A stretch of 64,000 nt of DNA from positions 1-64,000 of the IMG/VR virus record IMGVR_UViG_3300044591_002232; one strand, written 5' to 3'. Made by a program: the position numbers and the translations under genes. This document shows positions 9,532 to 53,794 of the stretch, piece by piece. Below the pieces are notes generated by a model, which worked only from the letters and a program-made list of their open reading frames with translations, did no database searches and was not told the DNA's origin. How positions within the stretch are numbered: position 1 is the stretch's first letter; every line of letters begins with the position of its first letter.

Positions 9532-9578
9532 GGCGTGCTATTATTAACCTGTCCAACAAACAAAGAGGATTTTAAAAA

Positions 9579-9923: not shown

Positions 9924-10004
9924 CACTTTTTTAACTGTCACACTAAAAATCAAAACACCTTAAACTCCTGATATACTATTAATAGTTATCAGGAGTTTTT
10001 TCTT

Positions 10005-26386: not shown

Positions 26387-26500
26387 TTGATTTAAAAACT
26401 CCAAAGGAGTTCTCTTAACCTCACGGTTAAAAATTCCTGCTTCAACGCTTACGCCTTCAGCAAATTCGCTTCGGGTCTTATCTCTGCTCCACAGGCAAAC
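26387..26500 (-). ncRNA. Probable TnpB omegaRNA scaffold / element right end
   Basis: Minus strand reads TTGAAGCAGGAA...CCGTGAGG...AACTCCTTTGGAGTT hairpin, then TCAA, as in IS605 right ends. Confidence 0.55.
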
Positions 26501-27582
26501 CCTGCCAATCCGACAGTTAAAATATTTTTTGCCGCATTAATGTCTCTATCGTGAACTGCTCCACAATCATGACAAGTCCATTCACGGACACTTAACGGCA
26601 TAGAAGATTGAATAGAACCACAAGAACTACAAGTTTTACTTGAAGGGAAAAATCTATCAACTTTCAATAGAGTTCTCCCATACCAGTCGCACTTATATTT
26701 TAATAAAAAAATAAATTGCGACCAAGAAACTTCAGCAATTGCTCTTGCTAATTTGTGGTTTTTCAACATACCAGACACATTTAAGTCCTCAACCACTATC
26801 GTTTGATTCTCACGAACAAGTTGAGTGCTTATTTTGTGATGATAATCTAATCTTGTATCTACAATCTTTTGATGTAGTTTAGCAACTTTAACTCTTGCTT
26901 TCTCACGATTTTTAGAACCTTTCTGCTTTTTATATAATCTTTGATTGAGGATTTTTAATCTTTTTTGGACTTTTCTTAACCACTTTGGATTGGTAATTTT
27001 ATCACCGTTAGAAGTAGCAAAGAAACAATCAATACCTAAATCAAGACCTATCACTTTATCTGTTGGTTCAAGTTGTTTGATTTCTTCTTGACACAACATA
27101 CTAATCATCCATCTTCCGCTTGGTTCAAGTGTGATGGTTATAGTAGAAGGATAAGAAGGGATTTGACGAGACCAACGAATATTCAAGGGTTCTTTTGATT
27201 TTGCTATATAAATCTTACCTTCTTTATACTTAAAGGCAGATTTAGTTAATTCACAAGAGTTTCTGTTTTTTCTCTTCTTAAATCTTGGATATTTACTTTT
27301 CTTTTGGAAAAAGTTTTTAAATCCAGTTTGTAGATGTTGAAGAGATTGTTGTAGAGGAACACAAGAAACTTCATTTAACCATTCATACTCTTCTTTTTTC
27401 TTGAGTTCCGTCAAAAGAGCACTTGTTTGATTGTATCCTACAGAGTTTTTATTTTGATGCCATTCTTTGGTTCTATAATCAAGAAAATGATTATAGACCA
27501 CACGGCAACAACCAAGAGTTTTTCTTAAAAGAACCTCTTGACTTTCTGTAGGATAAAATCTAAACTTGTATGCTCTATACAT
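26449..27582 (-). CDS. tnpB: IS200/IS605-type TnpB RNA-guided nuclease, no adjacent tnpA
   Basis: RAYKFRFYP, GLDLG, VVEDL, CSSCG/CHDCG, DRDINAAKNI; all three RuvC acidic residues present. Confidence 0.95.
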   Translation of the reverse strand: MYRAYKFRFYPTESQEVLLRKTLGCCRVVYNHFLDYRTKEWHQNKNSVGYNQTSALLTELKKKEEYEWLNEVSCVPLQQSLQHLQTGFKNFFQKKSKYPRFKKRKNRNSCELTKSAFKYKEGKIYIAKSKEPLNIRWSRQIPSYPSTITITLEPSGRWMISMLCQEEIKQLEPTDKVIGLDLGIDCFFATSNGDKITNPKWLRKVQKRLKILNQRLYKKQKGSKNREKARVKVAKLHQKIVDTRLDYHHKISTQLVRENQTIVVEDLNVSGMLKNHKLARAIAEVSWSQFIFLLKYKCDWYGRTLLKVDRFFPSSKTCSSCGSIQSSMPLSVREWTCHDCGAVHDRDINAAKNILTVGLAGFACGAEIRPEANLLKA

Positions 27583-29676: not shown

Positions 29677-30876
29677 CTATTGATTTTCTAGACGCTTCAA
29701 CGCAGACGCTAAATGATGTTGGACACCATTTAGACTTACTTCCGCTCCACGTCCGTAATCGACATACTCTGCCGATGTTAATTCTTGACCCGAAAGGTCT
29801 AACCACCCTTTTTTAAGGATGTTGATAGAGGCATTTAAGTCTCTATCGCGATGAGAGCCACAAGAAGGACAAGTCCATTCACGAACACTTAAAGGCATCT
29901 TGTCTTCTTTATGTCCACAGTTAGAACAGGTCTTGGAACTAGGGTAAAACCTATCTATTTTGGTCAAAGTTTTTCCGTACCAGTTACACTTGTACTCCAA
30001 CATAGAAACAAAAGTAGACCAAGAGGCATCACTAATGGATTTTGCAAGTTTGTGGTTCTTTAACATTCCAGAAACATTTAAGTCTTCAACAACAATCAAA
30101 TCAAATGTCTTAACAAGTTCTGTTGAAATATTATGCAAGAAATAATTTCTTGAGTTAGTAATGTTTTCGTGTACTTTAGCAACTTTAATACGTTGTCTAT
30201 TGTAACGATTACTACCTTTCTTTTTACGACTTAAATGTTTCTGTGCTTTTTTAAGTTTAGATTGGTTCTTTCTAAACCATCTTGGGTTATTGATGACTTG
30301 ACCATTTGATAAAGTCATTAGTTCTTTTAAACCCAAATCAATACCTACTACTTTACCAGTAGAGGGTATTGGATTGAGTTCTTGTTGGACTAAAATTGAA
30401 ACAAAATACTTTCCGGTTGGAGTTTTAGAAACAGTAATGCTTCTAAAATCGGCTTCTTCAGGGATATTTCGGTCCAGAACAATTTTGACCCAACCAATTT
30501 TTTCGATCCTTATTGAACATTTTTCTTGATCAAGTTTAAATCTAGTTTTTTCTGGAAGCCTAAATGATTGTCTATTGGTCTTTTTCTTGAATTTCGGCTT
30601 TCCAAGTTTAACCTTCCTTTTTTTGTTAAAGTATTGTTTCTTAAACTCAACAAAATCCATTCTTTTTTGTTGAAGTGTTGATGCCGATACTTCTTTAAGG
30701 AACTCAAACTCCTCTTGGTCTTTTAGTGTTTTTTCATTTACTATGGTACCATCATTATTGTTAAAATTTTCAACTAACTTATTCCAAACAAAACGAACAC
30801 AACCAAAAGTTTTAGCAAATAAAACCTCTTGTTCTTTTGTAGGATAAATCCTATATTTGTATGCTTTTAAATGCAT
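29677..30876 (-). CDS. tnpB: IS200/IS605-type TnpB, no adjacent tnpA
   Basis: KAYKYRIYP, GIDLG, VVEDL, CSNCG/CPSCG, DRDLNASINI; RuvC triad intact. Confidence 0.95.
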   Translation of the reverse strand: MHLKAYKYRIYPTKEQEVLFAKTFGCVRFVWNKLVENFNNNDGTIVNEKTLKDQEEFEFLKEVSASTLQQKRMDFVEFKKQYFNKKRKVKLGKPKFKKKTNRQSFRLPEKTRFKLDQEKCSIRIEKIGWVKIVLDRNIPEEADFRSITVSKTPTGKYFVSILVQQELNPIPSTGKVVGIDLGLKELMTLSNGQVINNPRWFRKNQSKLKKAQKHLSRKKKGSNRYNRQRIKVAKVHENITNSRNYFLHNISTELVKTFDLIVVEDLNVSGMLKNHKLAKSISDASWSTFVSMLEYKCNWYGKTLTKIDRFYPSSKTCSNCGHKEDKMPLSVREWTCPSCGSHRDRDLNASINILKKGWLDLSGQELTSAEYVDYGRGAEVSLNGVQHHLASALKRLENQ

Positions 30877-37813: not shown

Positions 37814-38716
37814 ATGGCTATCACCATAAAAGGTAAAAATTTCTACAAAGACGGAAAGAAAATTCGCCTTGCTGGTAATCATACCTGGAACACTGTTCAG
37901 ACAATTGGTGGTGAAAAAATAGGAATTGATAAGATAACCGGGAACTTCACAAGACTCTGGACAGTAGAAACAAAAGGAGCAAACTTTTCTCAATCACAAT
38001 GGGGTAGTAATACTCCCGGTATTGTAAGAATCAAAAACGGTCCCTGGAAGAAAGACGGTTCTCTAAACAAGAATTTTTATAAAAATCTAGAAGATGCCGT
38101 AAAAAGAGCCGAAAAAAGAGACATTGTAACCGGAGTCGTTCTTTTTGAAGGTTCTATTCCTGATATTTTTCCCCTAGCCTGGGAGAATCATCCATTCAAT
38201 GGTCTAGGACCAAAGGCACACGAACTTGTTCATACAAAGGGTCCTTGGAATAAGTTTCAAAGAGCCCACGTTAAGACAGTCGTAGAAATACTAGAACCTT
38301 ATGATAATGTAATTTATGAGGTTGGTAATGAGTTAATGTCCAACTCAACTGGTTGGTTTCAAAAGCAGGTTGTAAAATGGATTAACAAGTGGACGAATAA
38401 ACCAGTTGGCGTTTCTTATGCTCGGGGGATTAGAGCATCTAGTGGTAGAGATGAATCAGTATGGATGAAAAATACAGGAGCAGATTGGTTTGGTCCGACT
38501 TTTACTGCCCTAAGTAAAGGACAATTCTCTAAGAGTAATAAGCCAATTATATTTGATACGGACCACTCTTGGCCTCTTCGGTCTAATGTTTCTGGTCTGC
38601 AGAGCGCCTGGAGCCGAGGGTACAACCTCTTGCTAATGGACGGGTTTAATGGTACAATGTTGAGGAATCAGCAGAGCCTCGTTCCTGATAGGAATTTTAT
38701 AAACAATATTGTGTGA
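37814..38716 (+). CDS. Glycoside-hydrolase-like TIM-barrel protein (clan GH-A-like)
   Basis: VIYEVGNE acid/base-type motif, IIFDTDH; TCTAAATA late-like box at 37782-37789. Confidence 0.6.
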   Translation: MAITIKGKNFYKDGKKIRLAGNHTWNTVQTIGGEKIGIDKITGNFTRLWTVETKGANFSQSQWGSNTPGIVRIKNGPWKKDGSLNKNFYKNLEDAVKRAEKRDIVTGVVLFEGSIPDIFPLAWENHPFNGLGPKAHELVHTKGPWNKFQRAHVKTVVEILEPYDNVIYEVGNELMSNSTGWFQKQVVKWINKWTNKPVGVSYARGIRASSGRDESVWMKNTGADWFGPTFTALSKGQFSKSNKPIIFDTDHSWPLRSNVSGLQSAWSRGYNLLLMDGFNGTMLRNQQSLVPDRNFINNIV

Positions 38717-38818: not shown

Positions 38819-39592
38819 TTGACCACATTCAACCCTTTTGATATGATTAACTTATTAAACAAAATTCTTCATTTTTCAGAATCAATTAAATGTTCTAATG
38901 ACCCAATTTATTTTATTAACAATTATGTGAAATTTTCTTCGCTTAAAGAAGATAATGCGCCTTTTCTTCTTTATCCCGCCCAAGAAGAAATTGTCAAAAA
39001 AATTCATAAAAACAAATACAATCTTATAAAGGCCCCAAGACAATTTGGCAAATCATCGGTTCCATTATTCTATCTTTTACATCAGGCAATTTTTAAATCT
39101 AATTGCAATATTGTGATTAGTAGTTTTAGTTATCAAAATTCAAAATATTTACTTGAACGATTCTATAATACATATGAACAGTTACCCGATTGGATTAAAC
39201 CCGGAATAGTAAAAAGAACCTCAATGTGGATAATACTTAAAAATAATTCTAGGGTAAAAATAGTAACAAATATTTCTGCCCCTGAAACTTGGGAGAATTG
39301 GGAATACACTCACGCATTCTTAGATGAGTTTGCTTTTATGGAATATTATACTTCTGAGAATTTATTGGGCTCTTTCTTTCATCGTAATAGCTCTCCTAAA
39401 ATAATCATCGCAAGTACCAAAAAAGAAGGTAGTTATTTTAATGAGCTGGTTGAATATGCAAAGGATGGTATAAACAAATATTCATTATCAGAATATGATT
39501 GGAGAAATATTCCTAGGCTAGATATTAATTGGAAGGAAGAAGTGATTAAAAACATTGGTGAAGATGCCTTTAAACGTGAATACGAATTATGA
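38819..39592 (+). CDS. T4 gp17-like terminase large-subunit ATPase domain only (no nuclease)
   Basis: DPIYFINNYVK, PRQFGKS Walker A, FLDEFAF Walker B, ASTK, ends FKREYE. Possible start at ATG 38843. Confidence 0.8.
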   Translation: MTTFNPFDMINLLNKILHFSESIKCSNDPIYFINNYVKFSSLKEDNAPFLLYPAQEEIVKKIHKNKYNLIKAPRQFGKSSVPLFYLLHQAIFKSNCNIVISSFSYQNSKYLLERFYNTYEQLPDWIKPGIVKRTSMWIILKNNSRVKIVTNISAPETWENWEYTHAFLDEFAFMEYYTSENLLGSFFHRNSSPKIIIASTKKEGSYFNELVEYAKDGINKYSLSEYDWRNIPRLDINWKEEVIKNIGEDAFKREYEL

Positions 39593-39978
39593 TTAACTTT
39601 TTTAAATCTTTATGGGAAGATTTCATTATCTCCCGCTACGTCTCTGTTGGACTTCAATGGGGTGATGCAGAATCTTATTCGTTTATGGGTGAATGTGTTG
39701 GATACAACTCTCTTTGTAAGTCCCTAGAAAGACTAGAAACTCAATACGCAAAATTGGGCTATAAGGTAGTTGACCGAGAAACGTGGGTTCTTGCTGGTGG
39801 TTATGGCGAAGAATATGAATCAAAACTTAGAATTAAAGTCTACAAACCAAAAATAGTCATAAGAGATTCTGGTGCATCCGAATGGGTAAACAGTGCCGAA
39901 TATTTCTTAAGTGAAGAGGGCCAAGAGTTTTTAAAGAAAAGTAGTGAATTTGCCAAACGTTACATTGAGAAAAAATGA
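39589..39978 (+). CDS. Hypothetical protein
   Basis: ATGA-coupled ORF. Confidence 0.7.
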   Translation: MINFFKSLWEDFIISRYVSVGLQWGDAESYSFMGECVGYNSLCKSLERLETQYAKLGYKVVDRETWVLAGGYGEEYESKLRIKVYKPKIVIRDSGASEWVNSAEYFLSEEGQEFLKKSSEFAKRYIEKK

Positions 39979-40433
39979 CTGAATATTCCTGGTTAGAACC
40001 AATTCAAAGAGAAACCGAACGGATTAAAGAAGAAACCGAACGCATTAAAAAAGAGACCGAACGCCTTAGAGAGGAAAATAAAAAATTGTCTAAAATAAAT
40101 GTCAAAGAACAATTTGGACATATTCCAGATGGATTTTTTCTTGGTGAAGAATCTCAAAAAAACTACTACAACTATCGTATAATTGATTACACAGCGTCTG
40201 GCGAAGGGCGGACTATTTTTCTACAAATCTATCGCAATGATTCAAACGATTATTATGAAAAACGATGGCGACAATTTGTTGGTCAAGAATTCTATCTACC
40301 AGGAACCGAAGAACTTTCTGAAAGAGAGTTCCTGGACAAATATTCTAGATTTCTACCAAATGTCGTTGCCCATAAACTCCGAGATAGAAGTCTGACTATC
40401 TGGGAAACACAAGTACACTTTAACTACGGATAA
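39975..40433 (+). CDS. Hypothetical protein with heptad ETER repeats
   Basis: ETERIKE-ETERIKK-ETERLRE. Confidence 0.7.
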   Translation: MTEYSWLEPIQRETERIKEETERIKKETERLREENKKLSKINVKEQFGHIPDGFFLGEESQKNYYNYRIIDYTASGEGRTIFLQIYRNDSNDYYEKRWRQFVGQEFYLPGTEELSEREFLDKYSRFLPNVVAHKLRDRSLTIWETQVHFNYG

Positions 40434-44526: not shown

Positions 44527-44829
44527 ATCATGTCACTCACTATAGAAGAGATCCAAAACCAAATTAACACTCTTCAGCAAACCTTAGATCAGCTAAAAAA
44601 TCCAAAACTAGAAATTTCTAGGCACTTTACGGGTCAGTATTTTGCTCCTTATAAAGGAGTTTTTTACCGAAGAATGGAATCCGAGGGTGTTGCGATTTGG
44701 GAAACTTTTCTGGAGCCATCAGAAAGATGGGTTGCGGTCACCGCTAAAGAACTTAAAGAACTAGAAAACATTTTTCAGTCTGATTGCATTACAAAAGAAA
44801 AAGGCGATGATTAAACACCGCCTGGTAAA

Positions 44830-45078
44830 TTATGTGGCTGAGACCAATGATCCATCTTCTTCGGGTGGTTCATTGGTTTTTTCTGTTTCTGGACTTCTCA
44901 ACTGATAAATGGTCGCGTCCTGAGTAACATTCGTCATATCACCAAAATTGATCATGTTTTGATCGATATTGGCAATTTGGCTGTCAATCACATTATAAGG
45001 ATAATATCTCCTGTAATAATATGGATCAATATTATAATAACGCCTATAATAAGGATAAGGCCTAAATCGATAATGCAT
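44830..45078 (-). CDS. Tyr/Arg-rich small protein with a Q/N-rich C-terminal motif
   Basis: AGGAG RBS; YYRRYY repeats, then SQIANIDQNMINFGDMTNVTQ. Confidence 0.75.
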   Translation of the reverse strand: MHYRFRPYPYYRRYYNIDPYYYRRYYPYNVIDSQIANIDQNMINFGDMTNVTQDATIYQLRSPETEKTNEPPEEDGSLVSAT

Positions 45079-45090
45079 TTTTAAGTCTCC

Positions 45091-45219
45091 TTAATAATAG
45101 GGGTAGTAGGAATAATAAGGATACCATCTATTGTAATAGGGATAGCACCTATTCCAATAATAGTCGTCATAACAATATCTCCGCCTGTGGTACGGATAGT
45201 ATGGGTAGGGGTAGTACAT
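45091..45219 (-). CDS. 42-aa tyrosine-rich peptide (20 Tyr)
   Basis: AGGAGA RBS, ATG at 45219: MYYPYPYYPYHRRRYCYDDYYWNRCYPYYNRWYPYYSYYPYY. Confidence 0.7.
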   Translation of the reverse strand: MYYPYPYYPYHRRRYCYDDYYWNRCYPYYNRWYPYYSYYPYY

Positions 45220-45964
45220 TGAGTTCTCCTGCTTGGGATGGGATATCAAATGTCCAAATGTCGTATGCCTCTTTTTCAATATAATCAAAAGGAATCCAAC
45301 AATAGCCGTTGTCTCCCCAATCAGACCCAAAACTATTCTTTGCCAAAAATAGTCTCTTATTTAAATCATAACCAACCATACACATAGCATGGCCTCCAAG
45401 ATTTCTTTCCTTTCTAGAAGGAAAAGTAACAGTAGAAATACGCTCATTTAGATCCATAAAACTTTCATAAATGGTCATTCCAAATACAACTGGTTTGTTG
45501 TTGTTTATCACCTGGGCAATATAATAGGTGCTTATAAGTTTTTGGTAATTAAGAATTTTTCTTTTTATACCGTCCTCATATGCCTCTTCACTTGGTTTTA
45601 TGTTGAATTTGTCTATATCATAAGGCCATAATTTTTCACAACACACTCCATATTTGGATAATGATTTCATGCCATCCCTAAGAAACATTCCCTCGTCTTC
45701 TTCGATTATTCCGTGCTCAAGGCGTGTATTATAATAAACAAATAATCTACTTAGATGAGTAAACTGTTCAGGATAATTTCGATTAACGCAAAGTTCATAG
45801 GCATTTGTTATTGCATTGGCGGCGCAACTACCTAAATCGTCTTGCGATTCGACAATTGTATCCCATTCACGGAGATCTACGGATTCCCGCAAGATCTCTG
45901 TGCTATCGTTTCGGTAAATAAAGTCTCTAGTGTCAATTTGAGATGGTTTAATATTAAATTTCAT
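45167..45964 (-). CDS. Papain-like cysteine protease (C1A)
   Basis: Oxyanion Gln and catalytic Cys in QDDLGSC, His in GGHAM, Asn in KNSFGSDWGDNGY; LSRLFVYY; no signal peptide. Confidence 0.92.
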   Translation of the reverse strand: MKFNIKPSQIDTRDFIYRNDSTEILRESVDLREWDTIVESQDDLGSCAANAITNAYELCVNRNYPEQFTHLSRLFVYYNTRLEHGIIEEDEGMFLRDGMKSLSKYGVCCEKLWPYDIDKFNIKPSEEAYEDGIKRKILNYQKLISTYYIAQVINNNKPVVFGMTIYESFMDLNERISTVTFPSRKERNLGGHAMCMVGYDLNKRLFLAKNSFGSDWGDNGYCWIPFDYIEKEAYDIWTFDIPSQAGELNVLPLPILSVPQAEILL

Positions 45965-45973
45965 GGTTCTAGG

Positions 45974-46507
45974 TTAAATAATGTGCCAATCGCCGCCACG
46001 ACAAATTATGTTGATTGAATCATAAGGTACTTCAATAATGTACTCATCATCACCGTCAATTAATGAGCCATCCAAAGTCGTAATGGTGACTTTACGATTT
46101 CCGAGTGGTGGACCCATTTCTGCCTTTACGATGATCTCATAACAGTCGATGCAGTTTTCAGGTAGTGTAATAGTAACAGGTTCGTTGCTGTTGACACCGA
46201 TATAGTAATCATCGCAAGTAGCATCATAATCATCTGAAACCAGGATGCTTTTGCATTTACAGGTACACACTCCTGGCTCCCCTGGGGGTCCTGGGGGTCC
46301 TGGGGGTCCTGGGGGTCCTTCATTGCAGTGGTTGATAGTGTCCCTATCATCAATTTTGATGATAGTTTTATCGCCACGATCATTCAACATCGATGTTATT
46401 TCAGATCGAGTTGAATTAATGGCACCCTCTAGGGCTGGGTCATTATTTCTTTGATATTGGGCCAAAAGATTATAAAGATCAATGAGTTTTCTTTCTGCTG
46501 AGTCCAT
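45974..46507 (-). CDS. Short-collagen (GPP)4, Cys-rich protein with a fibre-head-like C-terminal domain
   Basis: GPPGPPGPPGPPGEPG-VCTCKC, then DYYIGVNS..VTITLP..IIVK..IDG..PY.S. Confidence 0.8.
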   Translation of the reverse strand: MDSAERKLIDLYNLLAQYQRNNDPALEGAINSTRSEITSMLNDRGDKTIIKIDDRDTINHCNEGPPGPPGPPGPPGEPGVCTCKCKSILVSDDYDATCDDYYIGVNSNEPVTITLPENCIDCYEIIVKAEMGPPLGNRKVTITTLDGSLIDGDDEYIIEVPYDSINIICRGGDWHII

Positions 46508-46523
46508 AGTTATTCTCCTTTTT

Positions 46524-46547
46524 AAAAAAGGGGGAGTTACCTCCCCC
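46524..46547 (-). terminator. Intrinsic terminator inside the minus-strand operon
   Basis: Minus strand GGGGGAG-GTAA-CTCCCCC followed by a U-run, between the first and second genes. Confidence 0.75.
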
Positions 46548-46566
46548 AGATAACTACTGAATTAAA

Positions 46567-47361
46567 TCAGCGTACAGCGTTGCTGGTTGAGGACTGACCA
46601 ACACCGGCCATGGTTCCGAAGTTAACCATACCTTGACGGGTCTCAGCAATTTGGCTGTTTAGGGCATTTAGCTGAGAGTTAACCTGGGAAGACAGGGCTG
46701 CAAATTGCGTATTGACGAGACCATCTCTGGCACCCCAATAGTCGTGGCGGCAATGTTGGAGATCAGTGTTGCGCTCAATAAGAAGACGATTGAGTTCATC
46801 ATTCTTGAGAGAATTGATGAGGTCACGGGTCTTCTCGTTTTCATAACCGACCTGCTTGCTAAGTTCAAACTTGCTCTCGGCAATTTCCTTGCTGAGTTGA
46901 GATTGACCTAGGGCAACAGCGGCGGCAACTTTAGCGGACTCAAGAGCAGTAGCAGTGGCCCCCCTTTCAGCAGTGAGAAGAATCTCGGTGCTGAGTTTTT
47001 GGGAGGCCATGTCTGTAGTTGCTTTTAGAGCCGCAACATCACGGGAAGTATCAAAATCTCTTGCTTGGCCAGCAAGATAGAAATCAGTGGCTCTTTGCTG
47101 AATCTTATCAGCGGCCTCATCGACTTTAACCTGAGTATGATAACCAGTGGTTAAAATATCACGGTTGGTTGATTCAGCGTGATCGGCAATTGCATACTTG
47201 ATTTCGCCTTGACCGACTGCATTAGCATAACGGTTATCGGCTGAGCGAGTAGCAACATCATAACGAATCTCGCCGCGCTCTACAGAACCTTCTCTACGAA
47301 TGTCTGAGTGCTGACCGGCAAGAATAGACCAGGGATCCGGTGCATAAACTGTGTCTGGCAT
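46567..47361 (-). CDS. 264-aa hendecad/coiled-coil protein with a Q/N-rich C-terminal motif
   Basis: AGGAG RBS before ATG 47361 (MPDTVY); 11-residue periodicity GEIRYDVATRS/ADNRYANAVGQ/GEIKYAIADHA. Confidence 0.85.
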   Translation of the reverse strand: MPDTVYAPDPWSILAGQHSDIRREGSVERGEIRYDVATRSADNRYANAVGQGEIKYAIADHAESTNRDILTTGYHTQVKVDEAADKIQQRATDFYLAGQARDFDTSRDVAALKATTDMASQKLSTEILLTAERGATATALESAKVAAAVALGQSQLSKEIAESKFELSKQVGYENEKTRDLINSLKNDELNRLLIERNTDLQHCRHDYWGARDGLVNTQFAALSSQVNSQLNALNSQIAETRQGMVNFGTMAGVGQSSTSNAVR

Positions 47362-47599
47362 TTGTTTTTCTCCTAAGGAAAAGAAAGGGTGGTTTGTTGG
47401 TAACACAATCTAATTCCTTCCTGACATAATGTCAGACGAGTCGGTTCTACAGGCGGCTGCAAATGAGTCGTCTGAGATTATTTCTCTTAGAATTGGATTA
47501 TGTTACCCAATTAGAGGAGAAGCATTAATGAAAGAGCCATTTCTGGAATCTTTTAGTAATACATCTTATTCTCTAAAGAGGAGAATTTCGTCTCCTGTT

Positions 47600-47863
47600 T
47601 TATTTAGTAAATTCGGAACGCCATTTTAAAAACCCGGCAATTGTATTTGGGTATTTTGGTTTTGCCCGACCTCTTGGTTTCTTTTGGGTTTTTATAAAAC
47701 ACTCATAATCAGACCAATTAAATGTTGGAATGGATCGATCTTGCTCAAGGCTTACCCAAAAGGTGGATTCATTTTTTAAGTGATCTTTCCACAAGGTAAA
47801 GGTGGCAAAAATTAATAACCAACCGAGTTTTATGTTTGAACAGAATTTTTTAATAGAAATCAT
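47600..47863 (-). CDS. Hypothetical basic protein
   Basis: 87-aa ORF with a basic C-terminus. Confidence 0.5.
   Translation of the reverse strand: MISIKKFCSNIKLGWLLIFATFTLWKDHLKNESTFWVSLEQDRSIPTFNWSDYECFIKTQKKPRGRAKPKYPNTIAGFLKWRSEFTK
47601..47608 (-). promoter_or_regulatory. Late-promoter-like ACTAAATA heading the minus-strand operon
   Basis: Same box as the other late-like sites, ~240 nt upstream of ATG 47361. Confidence 0.55.
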
Positions 47864-47906
47864 ATGCTCTTTTAATGAACTTAATATTATATATGGGGTT
47901 TAGGGC

Positions 47907-47935
47907 TTGACAAATTGGTGGATCCGTGCTAGTGT
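47907..47935 (+). promoter_or_regulatory. Canonical sigma70-type promoter
   Basis: TTGACA-17 nt-TAGTGT with an upstream TG; drives the gene at 47958. Confidence 0.7.
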
Positions 47936-47957
47936 GGAGCACCAGACCAGATGGAGC

Positions 47958-48155
47958 ATGACTGATTTAATTACTTTTACACAAACATCAGACGAGCCAT
48001 ATTTACGGCACGATTACAAAATCCACTTCATAAATAAGAAGACCAGAACATTTAACAATTACCAGGACGTACTTCAGACTTGGTTTCAGACACCAAGTGA
48101 ACTTTTAGATTATGTCGAGATTTTAGACTACCGAGAAAAAGCGAAGGGGTTTTAA
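47958..48155 (+). CDS. Hypothetical protein (MTDLITFTQTS..)
   Basis: GGAG RBS; YxRHxYK motif. Confidence 0.7.
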   Translation: MTDLITFTQTSDEPYLRHDYKIHFINKKTRTFNNYQDVLQTWFQTPSELLDYVEILDYREKAKGF

Positions 48156-48205
48156 AATGCAAATTAACTGGTTTAACGTATTGATAGATCTTTATATTAT
48201 CTGGT

Positions 48206-48622
48206 ATGGATTTAATTACGGAAAAAATAAAGATGATAAGTAAACCAATTTTAGGAACAGAAAATAAAACAAAAATGTCGTGGGCCGAGTATATTTTTAC
48301 TCACGTTCTTCCTACCTGGGTTCAGGTTTTTAGAATGAACTTTAGAATCTGGTCTGACCTAATGACAGATAATTTAGATAATTATGCTCTTCTAAAAAAT
48401 GATGATCCACTAGAAGAATGTTTGGGTTGGTTTTGGTCTAGTCTCGGTGAAGATGAGGTTTATCCAAAAGAGTTTCTAGAACATCTACTTCAGATGGTTG
48501 ATGATATTGACACTGGTAAGGTAAAGACTTATACATTAGAAGAATGTAGGGAAGACCTAAAACTTTTAGGAGTGGACGATTCTGAAAGTGACCACTTAGG
48601 CTCCAAATCTGGTTTAAATTGA
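48206..48622 (+). CDS. Hypothetical protein
   Basis: 138-aa ORF. Confidence 0.65.
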   Translation: MDLITEKIKMISKPILGTENKTKMSWAEYIFTHVLPTWVQVFRMNFRIWSDLMTDNLDNYALLKNDDPLEECLGWFWSSLGEDEVYPKEFLEHLLQMVDDIDTGKVKTYTLEECREDLKLLGVDDSESDHLGSKSGLN

Positions 48623-48655
48623 GTTAAACTGTGAAAGTTCAAAGGAAAATTATTA

Positions 48656-48940
48656 ATGACTGACCCTATCCACATTGCACTAGACCGACTACATGACTAT
48701 GCAGTTGGCCATCCTAATCATGACACTGATGAGATAGTGGAAGCCGCCATCGCCGCCATCGCCGCCGAACGGGAAGCATGTGCGCGGATTTGTGATAAGC
48801 AATACGAAAGGGCACGAACCAGCACAGGTGCAGCACGAGCCGATGCCTGCGCCACGGCTATTCGCGCCCGCACCGCCCTGACAAAAGAACAATTTACCGC
48901 TTCTAGTCAGTTTATCGAAAAAGATGATGACCAAATTTAG
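48656..48940 (+). CDS. Chimeric hypothetical protein spanning the AT-to-GC junction
   Basis: AT-rich N-terminus, then GC-rich AIAAIAAEREACARIC. Confidence 0.6.
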   Translation: MTDPIHIALDRLHDYAVGHPNHDTDEIVEAAIAAIAAEREACARICDKQYERARTSTGAARADACATAIRARTALTKEQFTASSQFIEKDDDQI

Positions 48941-49448
48941 ACAGCTGCCTGGCCAAGATGTCTTAAGGGAGCTTTTCCGCTACAGCGACTCCGATGGCGC
49001 ATTGTTCTGGAAGTATCGCCATAACAGTCAAATCGATCTGAGCAAACCCGCTGGCTGGCTGCAGCAAAATGGCTATCACGGGATTGCTGTGAACGGAGTC
49101 AAGTACAAGAGACATCGTATCATCTGGTGTTTCTTTAATCGTGATCCCAGGGAAATGGAAGTGGATCATATTAACGGAATCAGGAATGATGATAGGATCG
49201 AGAATCTGAGATTGGCTACCCGAACTCAGAATCAATACAACCGTCCCGTCCTTTCTACCAATAAGTGCGGACTAAAAGGTGTTTCACCTCACCATAACAA
49301 GTGGCGTGCGCAAATTCAAGATAGCAATGGACGGAATAAGTTTTTAGGTACTTTTGCTACACCAGAAGACGCTGCAGCAGCCTACGCAAAGGCTGCTCTT
49401 GAGCTTCAGGGTCAGTTTGTCCACCAATCCCTTACCACTCATGTCTAG
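48924..49448 (+). CDS. HNH endonuclease with C-terminal AP2 domain (homing-endonuclease type)
   Basis: HRIIW, EVDHINGIRNDDRIENLRLAT, GVS..KWRAQI..FLGTF.TPEDAAAAY. Confidence 0.9.
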   Translation: MMTKFRQLPGQDVLRELFRYSDSDGALFWKYRHNSQIDLSKPAGWLQQNGYHGIAVNGVKYKRHRIIWCFFNRDPREMEVDHINGIRNDDRIENLRLATRTQNQYNRPVLSTNKCGLKGVSPHHNKWRAQIQDSNGRNKFLGTFATPEDAAAAYAKAALELQGQFVHQSLTTHV

Positions 49449-50124
49449 TCATCAGTTGCCCAGCAAAAATAACCACCCATCCCGCCCGGACCTGTCCAAA
49501 ATGACAAGCAATCTTTTATCGGATGGTGGCTACGAAGCCAGCTCAATGTGGACTGGCCATGGAACACGGCAGGTGGCCCAGCACGAGCCTGAGGTGGCGG
49601 GGCCAGTCACAGATGGCCGTCCCATGAACCAGTCTTACTGGTTGGCATTACTCAACCACGATGCCTATGCAGCATCATTCCAATCAGTGGGCCAGTACCG
49701 ATCAGCATTGATCGAACGTGCGTCATCACCACGGGCCCAGCCCGAGCGAGAGGGACCGACAGATGAAGAGTGGGAAGACCTAAAGGAGCGCCTGTGGGAT
49801 CAGTACCAAACCGTTGGTTATCAAGGCGAGCGCTTTATGTACGACGCCGATTTCTACACGGCGCTTGATGTTGCCCGCCAAGAGATCACCCGCCACGCCC
49901 GCCCCACCATCGAGCCGGTGCCCGTGGCTGAGCGGCTGCCGGGACCGGAGGATTGTGATGCCAAAGGAAGATGCTGGGTCGGATGCCCTGAATTCAGCGA
50001 CGACGGCGATTACGGACCGACCACGTTTAACCCATCTTGGGAGCTGGCACCTTTCGCCCAAGGGGACACCCACTGGCGCCCCCACAACGCCCTGCCGGTG
50101 CCCGGTGCGGAGGTGCAATCGTGA
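49441..50124 (+). CDS. GC-rich hypothetical protein with a DUF551-like C-terminus
   Basis: EPVPVAERLPGPEDCD..GRCW...THWRPH. Start at ATG 49441 or 49501 is uncertain. Confidence 0.65.
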   Translation: MSSHQLPSKNNHPSRPDLSKMTSNLLSDGGYEASSMWTGHGTRQVAQHEPEVAGPVTDGRPMNQSYWLALLNHDAYAASFQSVGQYRSALIERASSPRAQPEREGPTDEEWEDLKERLWDQYQTVGYQGERFMYDADFYTALDVARQEITRHARPTIEPVPVAERLPGPEDCDAKGRCWVGCPEFSDDGDYGPTTFNPSWELAPFAQGDTHWRPHNALPVPGAEVQS

Positions 50125-50779
50125 AGGTCGAAGACTTCAGAGCCAGCATCATCGCCGCAGCCGCTCTCCTTCCACCTGAGCCCCGAGGCCCAAAATCAGG
50201 CACGACCTGCCTCTATCGCGGTGGCGAGGTTCTGTGGTGGGCCGAGCCTGATCCATGGTCCCCCATTCTGTCGGTGCCCGGTGCCTGAGGGGGAGGTAAT
50301 GGCACGACCTTAGCCGAGAATGACACTTTAAGAACTGTCCACTTCTGACAAAATTCTAGAAATCCCTAGATACAATAAGATCAAATCAATTCAGGTTTCC
50401 AATGTCCCGCACCCATCGCCAAACTTCTTACAATAAATGTGCTCTTAGGAGCCCCAAAACCCTGAACGAAAAACGTCAAATTGATTCTTTTCTCACCGAT
50501 GATGAAACTGTGGAGTTTCAGATTTCTGGTATGAATAGGATCAAAAATCGCCGGTCCATTCCCACACATCACGACGACATTGTTTGTTCTTCTTATTATG
50601 AGACTGATTATGACCACCACTGAAAAAACTGCGTATTCTAAGTCTATGTTAGCAGATGCCGAAGATTTTCTCTGGAAAAACTTTGGTATCTCTGTAGGAA
50701 CCCCCGATTATGAATGGCCTCAAGATCAAATCATCTCAGAGGCTGTAAAACGCGGCTGGAAATTTAGTTTTTATTGATT

Positions 50780-51250
50780 ATGACAACCAAAACACAACTT
50801 CAAACCAAAATTCAAGAACTAGAAGAAGAACTTTCTTCTTTTAAACAACAATTGAATAACTATAAAAACCATCCAACTATTCAAGAGGCATCTGTAGGTG
50901 ACGTTCTTGAGGATGGCTGTATCGTCCTTAAAAAAGAAAATGGTGTCGCTCTTTTGGTGGCCCCAAAATCAACCGATGTTTATGCTACTTGGAGTAAAGA
51001 ATTCCCTAAATTCTTCAAGAAACTAGAAGAACAAGGATTTAATCCTTCTCAGTTCTTTATTCCAACCATGGATCAACTTAATCTTGCCTATAAGACCATT
51101 CCTCAACACTTCACCAGGACCATCTATTGGTCTTCTACAGAGTTTAATGCTACGGGTGCTTACTGTCAGGGCTTTAGCGGTGGTAGCATCTTCAGCTTCA
51201 GTAAGACGATCAAGAACAGCGTGCGTGCCTTCCGGTGTGTTACTTATTGA
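50780..51250 (+). CDS. DGR-target-like CLec/DUF1566-like protein, copy 2
   Basis: Paralogue of 12276..12746; YWSSTE...VRAFRCVTY. Confidence 0.8.
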   Translation: MTTKTQLQTKIQELEEELSSFKQQLNNYKNHPTIQEASVGDVLEDGCIVLKKENGVALLVAPKSTDVYATWSKEFPKFFKKLEEQGFNPSQFFIPTMDQLNLAYKTIPQHFTRTIYWSSTEFNATGAYCQGFSGGSIFSFSKTIKNSVRAFRCVTY

Positions 51251-51512
51251 ACCTTGACACTTGAGGAACTGTCCATACTTCTGCCCGCACCACAAATGCG
51301 GGCTTTATAATATTCACAGTTAATCCAAATTCAATGGACACCTTCGGATTTTATGATGCATCAAATTGGCCCCAAGATCCTAAACAAAACTCGGCTTGGA
51401 ATGCCTATGCAAGGTCCACCACTCGGCGGTATCTTTCACCCGGAATCGCCCCTGAATGTTTTGTTGTAAGGCATCGTGGCTATAAGGGATACTACGTTTT
51501 TGGTAAATAAAC

Positions 51513-51836
51513 ATGGCAATTTGGGAAGCTAAAATTATTGCGGTTCAAAACGGACCCTTTATTAATGTGCGAGTAAATGCAAGTTCTGCAAACACCGCAA
51601 AAGCAACAATTAATGCGATTTATAATAATCCCCCAATGATTACTAACCTTAGATGTGTTAGTAGTATGGATAGTGGTGGTAATTACACATCTTCCTCGGA
51701 TCCAGATGATATGACTATCAAGTACTGGATTTTAGGAATTGGTACTGTTTTATATTTTGCCGTGACTTATTGGTATATCGCCATTCCTTTGGGGATTTTG
51801 GCATTTATTTTGTGGCTTAAATGGAACAGTTTGTAA
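51513..51836 (+). CDS. Membrane-anchored hypothetical protein
   Basis: C-terminal hydrophobic segment. Confidence 0.7.
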   Translation: MAIWEAKIIAVQNGPFINVRVNASSANTAKATINAIYNNPPMITNLRCVSSMDSGGNYTSSSDPDDMTIKYWILGIGTVLYFAVTYWYIAIPLGILAFILWLKWNSL

Positions 51837-52404
51837 ATTTTGATTGCGTCTTTTTGGGTCAATTCCAAAACTGTCACAACCCTGTCAGCAAATGGCAACC
51901 ATGTGCCCTAAGATACAGAGCAATCGAAAAAAGCCAATGATTTCTTATTTCTCCCAAATTCTCGCCAATGATCTCACTGTTGATGATATTGAGAATCTTT
52001 CACTAGAAGATACTTATAAGGTTCTAGACGAACTACAATCTTATAAGGAAGTTTATTTCGCAAAATGGCGTAAGGTCCCAAAAGCCGAGATTGATTCAGA
52101 AAAGAGTGTTGAAATTCTTGAGGACATGAAGGCCTACAATACTCTTTTTATTGTCGCAAAGCGTCGGGCTCATTATCTCAATCATGCAAAGGTGAAGCAA
52201 CTGACAACTGCTGTTATTGTATGGAAAAAGCGTGCCTTTAAACTTGGTAAGGACCTCGGTTTTTCTAATGACCAGGTGAAGGAGATTATGGTTTACTGAA
52301 CTTAATTAAATAAGCCGTAACAGATCCAACAAGAAGAACACAAAAACCAGTAAGAATTTCTTGGGTCATTGTTTTTCCATAAATACTTATTATTTATTGA
52401 TATC

Positions 52405-53081: not shown

Positions 53082-53160
53082 ACTCCACTGGCGAAACGGT
53101 AAACGCGGCAGACTCAAAATCTGCTTCTTCGGATTCCCAGTTCAAATCTGGGGTGGAGTA
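53082..53160 (+). tRNA. trnL: tRNA-Leu (anticodon CAA)
   Basis: Acceptor ACTCCAC/GTGGAGT, D-stem GCG/CGC, anticodon arm GCAGA-CTCAAAA-TCTGC, TC-TTCG-GA variable arm, T-arm CCCAG-TTCAAAT-CTGGG; CCA not encoded. Confidence 0.92.
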
Positions 53161-53794
53161 CTAACCTACTATTCTTTATTATGAACACTTTACATCAAGA
53201 CATTGAAAAAATTACTAATATGAGTTGCGGCGATGTAATTGATATTAATATGTCTGAAGAATCTGGTGGAGAAGTTCATCGTCATAATGATGGCTTGGTT
53301 CTTTATGAAATCCCATTATATGGTGGTGAAGGTAATTTAGTCGCAACATACCAGTTTAATAAAGAAGGTATTGAAGAATTAGTTACAACAGTCCATTCTT
53401 GGACATAGTAAGTATTTTTTACCATGAACACCACAGAAACCATTAATCTTCTCACAAAAAGAATCAAAAATCTTAAAGAAGAACTAGACCAAAATCCACA
53501 ATATAAACAAAACATTGTGGATTCTATTCTAGACGACATTTCTTATTATCAAAACCAACTGAATTCTTTACGAGACCAATGACTGAAGAAAATTTCTATC
53601 TTTTGTGGGAAAGATTCGCTCTTTCTGAAATTACAAAAAGTATTCCTGATAATGTAGAAGAATTTTGTAAACAGAATGAAATTACTGTTGATTATTTTAT
53701 AGAGGAGTGGTTGTGACGATTTGAAAGGTGCCCACCTCTTAAGGCCCAGCCGCAATCCATCCACTAAAATTACCAAGCATTTCACAAGAAACTT

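What the first reader, a model, noticed from the sequence alone, without database searches (positions are those of the whole stretch)
44830..47608. Candidate new system: late, minus-strand operon for a protease-matured, Tyr-rich self-assembling coat or fibre
Seen: five co-oriented genes opposite to all neighbours, each with an AGGAG-type RBS or tight coupling, downstream of an ACTAAATA box. In order: 264-aa hendecad coiled coil, intrinsic terminator, (GPP)4-collagen/Cys protein with a fibre-head-like domain, intact papain-like protease without signal peptide, 42-aa peptide with 20 Tyr, and an 82-aa Tyr/Arg-rich protein. The terminator implies gene 1 is the abundant subunit. Established analogies: Bacillus spore coat and exosporium use Tyr-rich, Cys-rich and collagen-like proteins, and some viruses embed virions in protein matrices. 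Inference: a phage-made matrix, sheath or decoration (UV shielding, aggregation or persistence) matured by the C1A protease. I do not recognise a described phage system like this.
Basis: partly seen in the sequence, partly recalled or inferred. Interest (0 to 1): 0.85.

Follow-up and report, generated by a model that had tools for sequence, protein, structure and literature searches.

The report
Conserved jumbo-phage fibre operon, function unknown
A real, conserved gene cluster of uncultured freshwater giant phages encodes a long rod protein, collagen-like fibre proteins, a papain-type protease and peptides that are almost half tyrosine, preceded by a previously undescribed structured RNA leader. 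It most likely builds a fibrous appendage, but its role has not been shown.

Summary
Five co-oriented minus-strand genes lie at 44830-47361 with the stated RBSs, terminators, collagen repeat, intact C1A protease and Tyr-rich products. The same gene order recurs in about 27 distinct viral loci, down to 30-35% identity for gene 1, so it is a module and not chance.

New findings:
- g1 is predicted as one roughly 240-residue helix with 11-residue repeat units and a nearly invariant 30-aa C-terminal module.
- g5 carries the same module (hhalign 99.8%).
- The g2 head has the β-sandwich fold of phage baseplate and tailspike adaptor domains (T4 gp10-like).
- The g1-g2 terminator is conserved in position across divergent loci.
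- A roughly 240-nt leader upstream of g1 is a covarying structured RNA that matches no Rfam family.
- Distant versions have a LuxR/CsgD-like regulator instead of the leader.

The protease is missing from about a third of loci, so obligate protease maturation is not supported. Membership of the exosporium (BclA/BclB) family fails.

Best reading (about 0.4): a late, attenuated operon for an accessory fibrous appendage on the virion surface. A phage-made matrix or an intracellular scaffold remains possible. g1 has no homologue in cultured phages or in 185,579 cellular genomes. I class it as a new variant of a known kind, with moderately high interest.

The parts
47601..47608 (-). ACTAAATA box, which reads TATAAATA in most relatives. 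It resembles a T4-type late promoter and lies 239 nt upstream of the g1 ATG.
   Evidence: the TAAATA core is invariant in 22 distinct leaders while the sequence upstream of it is not conserved. It is present in relatives that lack the upstream ORF or have it about 86 nt away. It is not enriched in the window.
47579..47596 (-). P0, a small hairpin directly after the box. It is probably the 5'-terminal stem-loop of the transcript.
   Evidence: RNAalifold: several P0 pairs switch between GC and AU. It is part of model R2. Read on the + strand, the same hairpin plus T-run looks like a terminator.
47508..47578 (-). Leader domain P1/P2. TTAGAG (47576-47571) pairs with CTCTAA (47516-47511) and encloses a long hairpin. 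Some relatives carry an extra roughly 60-nt stem inserted here.
   Evidence: P1 is kept in 22/22 sequences, with one double compensatory change (L235 TTAAAG/CTTTAA) and one wobble (L274). P2 has 2 covarying pairs. Model R2 finds it once per near-clade locus, on the sense strand.
47400..47506 (-). Leader domain P3, a 107-nt extended hairpin with 32 pairs. It contains the invariant unpaired TATGTCA and a possible alternative hairpin CTGRCA-TTA-TGTCAG.
   Evidence: Model R1. It occurs once per near-clade locus and scores 109 bits on the sense strand against 46 on the antisense strand. 97.3% of cells are paired, 13/32 pairs change on both sides, and 0/500 shuffles reach the observed values.
47362..47399 (-). 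Linker (47386-47399), then a pyrimidine tract (CCCTTTCTTTTCCTT, about 47371-47385) followed by the g1 Shine-Dalgarno AGGAG. The tract could pair with the SD.
   Evidence: predicted TTCC/GGAG pairing, nearly invariant, so there is no covariation evidence. A weak Rfam freshwater-2 hit falls here: 19 bits against a gathering score of 49.9, E=1.3.
46567..47361 (-). g1, a 264-aa rod protein. It has 11-residue repeats in the N-terminal third, a conserved central block (EKTRDLIN.LK..DLNR.LIERNT) and an invariant C-terminal module.
   Evidence: AF2 predicts a single helix over residues 10-251 (pLDDT >90 for residues 40-180). The family has 972 members, all unnamed and without Pfam domains. A weak ApoA-IV profile hit has E=0.0024.
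46570..46662 (-). C-terminal module of g1 (residues 234-264, ...SQIAETRQGMVNFGTMAGVGQSSTSNAVR).
   Evidence: It is nearly invariant across 29 sequences whose mean column identity is 36%. It is homologous to g5 residues 31-60 (hhalign 99.8%, E=3.5e-29). The motif occurs only in g1 and g5 across all six frames of the window.
46530..46547 (-). Intrinsic terminator between g1 and g2, acting as an attenuator.
   Evidence: A GC-rich hairpin plus T-run sits at the same place in about 22/26 loci, with different stem sequences in distant loci.
45974..46507 (-). g2, a 177-aa fibre protein. It has an N-terminal helical hairpin, Cys61, 5 Gly-X-Y triplets (46271-46318), CTCKC, and a C-terminal β-sandwich head (45977-46252) with the invariant motif KAEMGPPLGNRK.
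   Evidence: pLDDT 84. Foldseek PDB hits: KP1 baseplate 9f4a E=2.5e-5, Pa223 capsid spike, Solidus tailspike, T4 baseplate 5iv5_AC, CBA120 TSP4. BFVD gives 262 hits, including Gp9/Gp10 baseplate, tail fibre and collagen-repeat proteins.
45167..45964 (-). g3, a C1A (papain-family) cysteine peptidase of the xylellain type, with no pro-region and no signal peptide.
   Evidence: Pfam PF00112 E=4e-14. PDB 3OIS E=5e-36, with the alignment starting at 3OIS residue 37. Catalytic residues are conserved. Hydropathy.
45091..45219 (-). g4, a 42-aa peptide with 20 Tyr, 2 conserved Cys and pI 8.8. It has its own AGGAGA RBS and overlaps the end of g3 by 53 nt in another frame.
   Evidence: Orthologues are 46-73% identical in all near-clade loci. 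In L023 and L028 it is adjacent to g3 rather than overlapping it, so it is a separate gene and not a frameshift product.
44830..45078 (-). g5, an 82-aa protein. It has a Tyr/Arg/Pro-rich N-terminal half that is paralogous to g4, a g1-type module (44899-44988), and an acidic, Pro-rich tail.
44802..44823 (-). Intrinsic terminator that closes the operon.
47600..47863 (-). Upstream co-oriented 87-aa ORF with one hydrophobic segment. It is probably a separate, earlier transcription unit.
   Evidence: (conserved in L001, L003, L010, L030). A sigma-70-like promoter TTGTCA-16-TATAAT (11/12) lies at 47913-47886.

Best explanation
This is a self-contained accessory operon of uncultured freshwater jumbo phages. 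Their nearest cultured relatives, judged from one gene, are Synechococcus phages B3 and B23. The operon most likely makes a fibrous appendage (whisker, hair or fibre type) that ends up on the virion surface.

Proposed course of events:
1. Transcription starts at a T4-late-like (A/T)(C/A)TAAATA box (inferred).
2. The transcript begins with a 5' hairpin and a roughly 240-nt structured leader. The structure is shown by covariation; its function is unknown, and it may gate g1 translation.
3. g1 is made in excess, because a positionally conserved terminator lets only a fraction of transcripts continue. The conservation is shown; the attenuation is inferred.
4. g1 is a rod of roughly 36 nm built from 11-residue units, and probably oligomerises through its invariant 30-aa C-terminal module (inferred).
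5. g2, and in most relatives a second paralogue g2b, are trimeric stalks whose heads have the adaptor fold that T4 gp10 and tailspikes use to join fibre components (fold shown). In g2, Cys residues bracket the short collagen helix and would lock the trimer by disulfides once outside the cell (inferred).
6. g5 carries the same 30-aa module as g1 (shown). It would therefore be recruited to the same site and bring an aromatic-rich, sticky low-complexity segment. g4 is a free copy of that segment.
7. The xylellain-like protease g3 is made without a pro-region, so it is probably active on synthesis. It is an optional helper, either trimming components or riding on the fibre, and is not essential.
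For: - Synteny is conserved across about 27 distinct loci.
- The g2 head fold matches only virion-appendage parts in the PDB and hundreds of phage and giant-virus fibre or baseplate proteins in BFVD.
- g1 is predicted as a single long helix, and its family varies in length in 11-aa steps.
- The number of collagen triplets varies from 5 to about 35, as expected for a spacer or stalk.
- g1 and g5 share a terminal module.
- The internal terminator is conserved in position.
- The TAAATA box is invariant and is followed by a covarying 5' hairpin.
- No signal peptide or transmembrane segment is present.
- g1 is found only in viral and metagenomic contigs, not in 185,579 cellular genomes or in cultured phages.
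- A T4-type terminase domain lies in the same window.
Against: - The module sits among non-structural accessory genes, on the opposite strand, in every lineage examined.
- It has dedicated regulation, either a structured leader or a LuxR/CsgD-like regulator. That is unusual for virion genes.
- No virion-anchoring domain was recognised.
- No g1 or g3 homologue was found in B3 or B23, the nearest cultured relatives, so the module is dispensable.
- Peptides that are nearly half Tyr, and a C1A protease, have no precedent that I know of in phage fibres.
- No proteomic or expression data exist.
- The oligomeric states and all contacts between the proteins are inferred.
Confidence: 0.4

Rival explanations
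1. The operon makes a phage-produced matrix, coat or occlusion material, not an appendage of single virions. Rods, mini-collagen and Tyr/Cys-rich peptides are matured by the protease and cross-linked to embed or aggregate particles.
For: - The composition fits a composite material: g1 is an excess rod protein, g4 and g5 are aromatic-rich low-complexity peptides, and Cys brackets the collagen.
- The module is accessory and separately regulated.
- The coiled-coil plus Gly/Tyr-rich pairing recurs with a different composition in L076, which suggests a function driven by composition.
Against: - The protease is missing from about a third of loci.
- The g2 head has an adaptor fold typical of discrete virion fibres.
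- No cross-linking enzyme (peroxidase, tyrosinase or transglutaminase) was seen among the conserved gene families of the loci or among the module and flanking proteins scanned against Pfam.
- There is no BclA/BclB or coat-protein homology.
Confidence: 0.15
2. An intracellular scaffold or condensate. g1 filaments, together with Tyr/Arg-rich peptides prone to phase separation, organise a compartment or cytoskeletal structure in the infected cell and are not packaged.
For: - All products are cytoplasmic at synthesis.
- Tyr/Arg and Gly/Tyr/Trp low-complexity composition is conserved while the sequence is not.
- The module has a dedicated regulator or leader.
- It lies in a non-structural neighbourhood.
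Against: - A collagen stalk bracketed by Cys residues makes little sense in a reducing cytoplasm.
- The head-domain fold is that of virion parts.
- The promoter is of the late type and not of the early type expected for a replication compartment.
Confidence: 0.15
3. A host-directed protease cassette. g3 degrades a host protein such as an S-layer, pilus or antenna component. g4 (and g5) act as cytoplasmic inhibitors, as staphostatins do for staphopains. The fibre genes are only neighbours.
For: - g3 lacks a pro-region, so it needs restraint.
- In the near clade, g4 is translationally coupled to g3.
- Homologous proteases occur alone in other jumbo phages: FLC9, Lak and LR756511.
Against: - In distant loci the Tyr-rich genes are not next to g3, and they persist where g3 is absent.
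- g5 shares its module with g1, not with g3.
- The protease is linked with head-domain fibre genes even in very distant loci: L076, L079-L081.
Confidence: 0.1
4. A RiPP- or bacteriocin-like system. g4 and g5 are precursor peptides processed by g3.
For: Small, unusual peptides lie next to a cysteine protease. There is a weak Peptidase_C39_2 hit, E=0.0095 and below cut-off.
Against: - No modifying enzyme, transporter or immunity gene was seen among the conserved gene families of the loci or the module proteins scanned.
- No leader/core architecture is present.
- The peptides are conserved by composition.
- The linkage is with fibre proteins.
- The protease is optional.
Confidence: 0.03

Closest known systems
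Phage fibritin-type whiskers (T4 wac) and other coiled-coil virion fibres
   Same: A long α-helical rod with a small, highly conserved C-terminal module that could nucleate oligomerisation. Late expression. Dispensable accessory fibre.
   Different: No sequence or Pfam relation. 11-residue units instead of heptads. The module is not the foldon sequence. It is encoded outside any structural gene block. A second small protein shares the terminal module.
Collagen-like phage and prophage fibre proteins, and T4 gp10 / CBA120 TSP4-type adaptor domains
   Same: g2 has a Gly-X-Y stalk plus a C-terminal β-sandwich whose best structural matches are baseplate and tailspike adaptor domains. Collagen-like prophage tail-fibre proteins are described in PMC3368898.
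   Different: g2 is very small (177 aa). The collagen segment is bracketed by conserved Cys residues. There is no recognisable receptor-binding or enzymatic domain. The KAEMGPPLGNRK loop is specific to this family.
Xylellain (Xylella fastidiosa C1A protease, PDB 3OIS). By function, Cwp84 of C. difficile, which matures the S-layer (from my own knowledge).
   Same: The closest solved relative of g3 (E=5e-36). The Gln/Cys/His/Asn catalytic set is intact.
   Different: g3 starts at about residue 37 of the crystallised protein, so it lacks the N-terminal pro-region. It is phage-encoded and linked to fibre genes.
Bacillus exosporium and spore-coat proteins (BclA/BclB, Tyr-rich CotG/CotT, YabG protease)
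   Same: A comparable inventory: collagen-like protein, Tyr-rich small proteins and a cysteine protease. A GerE/LuxR-type regulator occurs in distant loci.
   Different: No homology. The head fold is not C1q-like, there is no NCBIfam BclA/BclB hit, the protease family differs, and no homologue was found in 185,579 cellular genomes. This is an analogy only.
Keratin intermediate filaments with high-Gly/Tyr and high-Cys keratin-associated proteins (from my own knowledge)
   Same: A coiled-coil rod together with small aromatic-rich and Cys-containing matrix proteins. The L076 variant is Gly/Tyr/Trp-rich.
   Different: Purely an analogy of composition. No homology, and no evidence that a matrix forms.
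Structured 5' leaders and riboswitch-like cis-regulators (Rfam); the freshwater-2 motif RF02980
   Same: A long covarying leader between a promoter-like box and the RBS. Weak local resemblance to freshwater-2 around the RBS.
   Different: No Rfam family reaches its gathering score. No ligand, protein partner or switching has been shown.

Membership tests
Peptidase C1A (papain family) | Match to PF00112 above the gathering score | tested here: met
   53.6 bits against a cut-off of 20.7, E=4e-14. 3OIS E=5e-36.
Peptidase C1A (papain family) | Catalytic Gln-Cys-His-Asn residues present | tested here: met
   Q41, C47, H192 and N210. H and N are invariant, and Q and C are at least 90% conserved in 20 relatives.
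Peptidase C1A (papain family) | Zymogen pro-region (I29-type or xylellain N-terminal) and a secretion signal | tested here: not met
   No Inhibitor_I29 hit. The alignment to 3OIS begins at its residue 37. No hydrophobic N-terminus.
Collagen triple-helix repeat proteins | Uninterrupted Gly-X-Y repeats long enough to score as PF01391 | tested here: inconclusive
   The window copy has 5 triplets and scores 17.8 bits against a cut-off of 27.2. The family profile hits collagens at E=7e-50, and orthologues have up to about 35 triplets.
T4 gp10-like / tailspike XD adaptor domain | β-sandwich fold superposable on solved baseplate or tailspike adaptor domains | tested here: met
   Foldseek: 9f4a_LS E=2.5e-5 (rmsd 2.6 Å over 100 columns), 24qj E=8e-5, 5iv5_AC E=8e-4. 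BFVD includes 'Baseplate structural protein Gp9/Gp10'. This is a match at fold level only; there is no sequence-family hit.
BclA/BclB exosporium collagen-like glycoproteins | C-terminal BclA (C1q/TNF-like) or BclB domain recognisable by sequence model or fold | tested here: not met
   No NCBIfam or Pfam hit. The only PDB sequence hit to BclA (1wck) covers the collagen repeat alone. The best fold matches are phage adaptor domains. One BFVD hit is named 'BclB C-terminal domain-containing', which is a lead only.
Fibritin (T4 wac) | Sequence-family match or foldon at the C-terminus | tested here: not met
   g1 has no Pfam or PHROG hit at E<=1. tblastn against 50,697 phage records found nothing.
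Intrinsic (Rho-independent) terminator | GC-rich hairpin followed by a T-run, conserved in position | tested here: met
   about 22/26 loci.
T4-type late promoter | TATAAATA at -10, and dependence on a gp55-type factor | tested here: inconclusive
   The window has ACTAAATA, and 19 of the 22 leaders have TATAAATA. The TAAATA core is invariant. The motif is not enriched in the window. No gp55 homologue was searched for and no transcription start site is known. A T4-type terminase domain is present.
Any Rfam RNA family (leader) | Covariance-model score at or above the gathering threshold | tested here: not met
   Only the tRNA reaches gathering in the window. The best hit in the leader is freshwater-2, at 19.1 bits against 49.9.
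RiPP biosynthetic cluster | A modifying enzyme and/or transporter next to the precursor peptides | tested here: not met
   None was seen among the conserved gene families of the loci or among the module and flanking proteins scanned against Pfam. Not every ORF of every locus was scanned.
CsgD/NarL-type response regulators (protein F5 of distant loci, not in the window) | C-terminal LuxR/GerE HTH, and an equivalog score above cut-off | tested here: inconclusive
   GerE PF00196 is met (58-60 bits against 23.5). The best NCBIfam hit is CsgD at 72 bits, far below its cut-off of 250. F5 belongs to the superfamily but is not CsgD.

The most novel reading that the evidence does not exclude
The module is not a virion fibre but a conditionally expressed, phage-made composite material or condensate. 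In this reading, excess g1 rods combine with aromatic-rich low-complexity peptides, which are tethered through the 30-aa module shared by g1 and g5, and with disulfide-bracketed mini-collagens. The whole is switched on by a new class of structured leader RNA in one clade and by a CsgD/NarL-like regulator in another. That would make it a new kind of viral extracellular or intracellular matrix system, together with a new cis-regulatory RNA.
Probability: 0.2. Interest if true: 0.85.

Novelty: new variant of a known kind. Interest (0 to 1): 0.62.

Why it matters
The module is widespread in lake viromes: g1 alone has 972 clusters at 90% identity. It is absent from every cultured phage and cellular genome searched.

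It combines parts not known to occur together in phages:
- a rod built from 11-residue units,
- Cys-bracketed mini-collagens with a baseplate-adaptor head,
- a C1A protease without a pro-region,
- peptides that are 40-50% tyrosine,
- a docking or oligomerisation module shared between the rod and a Tyr-rich protein.

If these are virion fibres, they would show a new way for jumbo phages to decorate particles, for example for adhesion to host sheaths. If they are not, this is a new viral material.

Separately, the roughly 240-nt covarying leader is a candidate new cis-regulatory RNA, with a clear genetic context in which to test it.

Tried and rejected
- DNA-level search of cultured phages with the locus. 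The only hit was an irrelevant 160-bp match.
- tblastn of g1 against 50,697 phage records found nothing. For g2, only two weak head-domain hits appeared.
- Pfam, PHROG and NCBIfam scans of g1, g4 and g5 gave nothing.
- The genome-contig scan with the g1 profile found no relative.
- The PDB profile search for g1 gave only a weak apolipoprotein A-IV/A-I resemblance, which reflects 11/22-mer helices and not homology.
- I considered a programmed frameshift joining g3 to g4 and rejected it. g4 has its own RBS, and in L023 and L028 it is adjacent to g3 rather than overlapping it.
- I considered a + strand ORF (47429-47629) as the reason for the leader's conservation and rejected it. Relatives have indels that are not multiples of three, the changes are compensatory, and the covariance model scores the g1 sense strand much higher.
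- I considered the stop codon of the upstream ORF as the reason for conservation of the box and rejected it, because the box is kept where that ORF is absent or about 86 nt away.
- FLC9 and LR756511 carry a lone protease homologue without the module.
- Three literature searches found no description of such a system, one found no paper on the freshwater-2 motif, and one search was badly chosen.
- The protein comparison failed on the two alignments, so I ran hhalign locally instead.

Full report
**What is there.**
On the minus strand of the window lie five tightly packed genes:
- g1 (46567-47361, 264 aa)
- g2 (45974-46507, 177 aa)
- g3 (45167-45964, 265 aa)
- g4 (45091-45219, 42 aa)
- g5 (44830-45078, 82 aa)

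AGGAG-type ribosome-binding sites precede g1, g2, g4 and g5. g3 starts 9 nt after the g2 stop, and g4 starts inside the last 53 nt of g3 in another frame. Strong intrinsic terminators follow g1 (46547-46530) and g5 (44823-44802).

g4 has 20 Tyr in 42 residues, g5 has 13 Tyr and 7 Arg, and g2 has 8 Cys and the run GPPGPPGPPGPPGEPG. None of the five has a hydrophobic N-terminus or a membrane segment.

There are two small corrections. First, a sixth co-oriented ORF (47600-47863) with its own near-consensus sigma-70-type promoter lies directly upstream. Second, the ACTAAATA box is 239 nt from the g1 ATG and is not over-represented in the window.

**It is a module, not a coincidence.**
Scans of IMG/VR with g1 and with g3 returned 53 and 34 loci, many on contigs of 160-260 kb. 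Two of them are 100% identical to the window.

BLASTP of the five products against all ORFs of these loci shows the order g1-g2-(g2b)-g3-g4-g5 in every near relative. Most relatives have a second paralogue with the same head domain (g2b, about 203 aa) between g2 and g3. The window lacks it.

Family clustering and a presence table give the following.
- g1 with a g2-type protein occurs in 27/27 representatives.
- At least two head-domain proteins occur in 22/27.
- An aromatic-rich small protein occurs in most.
- The protease occurs within 6 kb in 16 of them. It is absent from 9 of the 25 that have at least 3 kb of sequence downstream of g1.

A GC-rich, very divergent version (L076) keeps several features: a g1-like protein with the same C-terminal motif, two Gly/Tyr/Trp-rich small proteins, three or more head-domain proteins and the protease.

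g1 has 972 relatives in the 5.8-billion-protein collection. All are unnamed and have no Pfam domain. It has no relative in 50,697 cultured-phage records or in one genome from each of 185,579 prokaryotic species.

By its RNA ligase, the window's nearest cultured relatives are the 245-kb Synechococcus phages B3 and B23, at 59% identity. Neither appears among the phage-collection hits for g1 or g3.

**The proteins.**

*g1.* AlphaFold predicts one uninterrupted helix from residue 10 to 251, with pLDDT above 90 for residues 40-180. That is a rod of about 36 nm.
- The N-terminal third consists of visible 11-residue units.
- 47 of 70 full-length homologues have lengths that are exact multiples of 11.
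- The alignment shows insertions of whole DIRRE-type units.
- The last 30 residues (...ETRQGMVNFGTMAGVGQSSTSNNVR) are almost invariant in sequences that are otherwise 35-40% identical.

*g2.* The model (pLDDT 84) has an N-terminal helical hairpin, a Gly-X-Y segment flanked by conserved Cys, and a C-terminal β-sandwich.
- The best PDB matches of the β-sandwich are all parts of virion appendages: Klebsiella phage KP1 baseplate, Pa223 capsid spike, a tailspike, the T4 baseplate chain 5iv5_AC, and the CBA120 TSP4 N-terminal adaptor.
- 262 BFVD models match at E<=1e-3. They include proteins named Gp9/Gp10 baseplate, tail fibre, minor tail and collagen-repeat, from phages and giant viruses.
- The number of collagen triplets ranges from 5, in the window, to about 35.

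*g3.* This is a true C1A peptidase. It is closest to xylellain (3OIS, E=5e-36) but begins about 36 residues into that protein, so it lacks the pro-region. Its catalytic residues are conserved.

*g4 and g5.* g4 and the N-terminal half of g5 are paralogous Tyr/Pro/Arg-rich segments. Across lineages their composition is conserved (Tyr/Arg, Tyr/Trp/Asp, or Gly/Tyr/Trp) while their sequence is not.

**A link between rod and Tyr-rich protein.**
Residues 31-60 of g5 are homologous to the invariant C-terminal module of g1 (hhalign probability 99.8%, E=3.5e-29, 42% identity). In all six reading frames of the 64-kb window, the motif Q.[MILV].N.G.[MLIV]..[VI].Q occurs only in these two proteins. In relatives it occurs only in their orthologues.

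The simplest reading is a shared oligomerisation or docking element. This is an inference. Under it, the aromatic-rich segment of g5 is brought to the same place as the C-terminal end of the g1 rod.

**Regulation.**
The terminator after g1 is kept in position in about 22 of 26 loci, and distant loci use unrelated stem sequences. Attenuated read-through, with g1 made in excess of the downstream genes, is therefore a selected feature.

Upstream of g1, the near clade has a roughly 240-nt untranslated stretch that is better conserved than the coding regions. In order it contains:
- an invariant TAAATA core, which reads TATAAATA (the T4 late-promoter consensus) in most relatives and ACTAAATA in the window;
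- a covarying hairpin, P0;
- a helix P1 (TTAGAG/CTCTAA) that encloses hairpin P2 and, in some phages, an extra roughly 60-nt stem;
- a 107-nt extended hairpin, P3;
- a pyrimidine tract and the RBS.

The evidence for structure is as follows.
- RNAalifold finds 53-66 pairs, about 20 of them with compensatory changes.
- For P3, 97.3% of cells are paired and 13 of 32 pairs change on both sides. No shuffle out of 500 reaches the observed values, and slid controls give at most 5 such pairs.
- Covariance models find each domain once per near-clade locus, and nowhere else in the window or in the distant loci.
- The models strongly favour the g1 sense strand, 109 against 46 bits for P3.
- No Rfam family reaches its gathering score. 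The only hint is a 19-bit freshwater-2 match around the RBS.

Distant loci lack the leader. Instead they have, directly upstream of g1, a roughly 254-aa protein with a GerE/LuxR HTH whose best, sub-threshold NCBIfam match is CsgD/NarL. They also have an extra Pro/Glu-rich protein, F10.

One alternative remains for the box plus P0. Read on the + strand, they form a hairpin followed by a T-run, so they could also stop antisense transcription. The invariance of the TAAATA sequence itself, where any T-rich tract would serve as a terminator tail, favours a sequence-specific element.

**Interpretation.**
The fold of the head domain, the rod-like g1, the stepwise length variation of both stalks, the Cys brackets, the lack of export signals, the late-type box and the strictly viral distribution all fit an accessory fibre or whisker system that is assembled in the cytoplasm and carried on the particle.

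Four things count against that reading.
- In every lineage the module lies among non-structural accessory genes: RNA repair, methyltransferases, a porin, AAA ATPases.
- It has its own regulator or leader.
- No g1 or g3 homologue was found in the nearest cultured relatives, so the module is dispensable.
- Neither Tyr-rich peptides nor a papain-type protease are known components of phage fibres.

I therefore give the virion-fibre reading about 0.4. A RiPP reading is unlikely (0.03).

The spore-coat and exosporium comparison survives only as an analogy.

**Novelty and value.**
The individual parts belong to known kinds: coiled-coil fibre, collagen-like fibre with a gp10-type adaptor domain, C1A peptidase, and attenuator. 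The combination appears undescribed, as do the module shared by g1 and g5, the roughly 50%-Tyr peptides and the structured leader. Three literature searches found nothing comparable. I rate it a new variant of a known kind, with interest 0.62. The leader RNA is an independent candidate for a new cis-regulatory RNA class.

Noticed in passing
window 47362-47608 (-): The roughly 240-nt leader upstream of g1 is a conserved, covarying structured RNA (P0, P1/P2, P3) that matches no Rfam family. The invariant unpaired TATGTCA and an alternative hairpin (CTGRCA-TTA-TGTCAG) that competes with the inner P3 helix suggest a switch.
   Followed up: yes
window 46508-46566 (-) and the same spacer in L001-L024: Around the g1-g2 terminator, the sequence GTAGTTAT pairs with ATAACTA(TG) at the g2 start codon, enclosing the terminator and the g2 RBS. 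L023 shows a compensatory change (TAGTTAA/TTAACTA). This may couple g2 translation to read-through.
   Followed up: partly
L035-L053, about 100-200 nt upstream of g1 (e.g. L041:5101-5865): Distant versions of the module have a LuxR/GerE-HTH regulator of about 254 aa (best sub-threshold NCBIfam match CsgD/NarL) in place of the structured leader. They also have an extra Pro/Glu-rich protein, F10.
   Followed up: partly
window 20924-22411 (+), 26449-27582 (-), 29677-30876 (-): Three transposase genes of PHROG family 506 ('transposase'; I take them to be IS200/IS605-type TnpB). Each has (T/A)(A/C)TAAATA boxes upstream, 25-27 nt before the ATG for the two minus-strand copies.
   Followed up: no
window 38819-40433 (+): A 257-aa ORF matches only the N-terminal (ATPase) part of the T4-type large terminase. 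It is followed by two small overlapping ORFs. This may be a split or interrupted terminase gene. TCTAAATA lies 24 nt upstream of the preceding ORF 37814-38716.
   Followed up: no
window 46000-52000; 48924-49448 (+): A GC-richer island (42-47% against about 36% elsewhere) covers g1 and the + strand genes beyond it. It includes an HNH-AP2 homing-endonuclease-like gene. The first 4 kb of the window are also GC-rich (49%).
   Followed up: no
window 4220-10676 (+), 53082-53161 (+): A glucosyltransferase-DNA methyltransferase fusion (4220-6130). An RNA-repair-like set: helicase, RnlA-type RNA ligase and phosphoesterase. A tRNA-Leu(CAA).
   Followed up: no
window 47600-47863 (-), promoter-like site 47913-47886: A conserved 87-aa ORF with one hydrophobic segment, co-oriented with the operon and preceded by TTGTCA-16-TATAAT (11/12). 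Its stop codon overlaps the ACTAAATA box in the window.
   Followed up: partly
L076:1169-2551 and 5468-5998: Three paralogous proteins that begin MYKK(V/I)T..I.EEH lie inside the divergent GC-rich version of the module. Their function is unknown.
   Followed up: no
L042:9333-10208 (-): A Gram-negative porin gene (Porin_4, E=5e-22) lies on a 400-kb viral contig next to a distant copy of the module.
   Followed up: no
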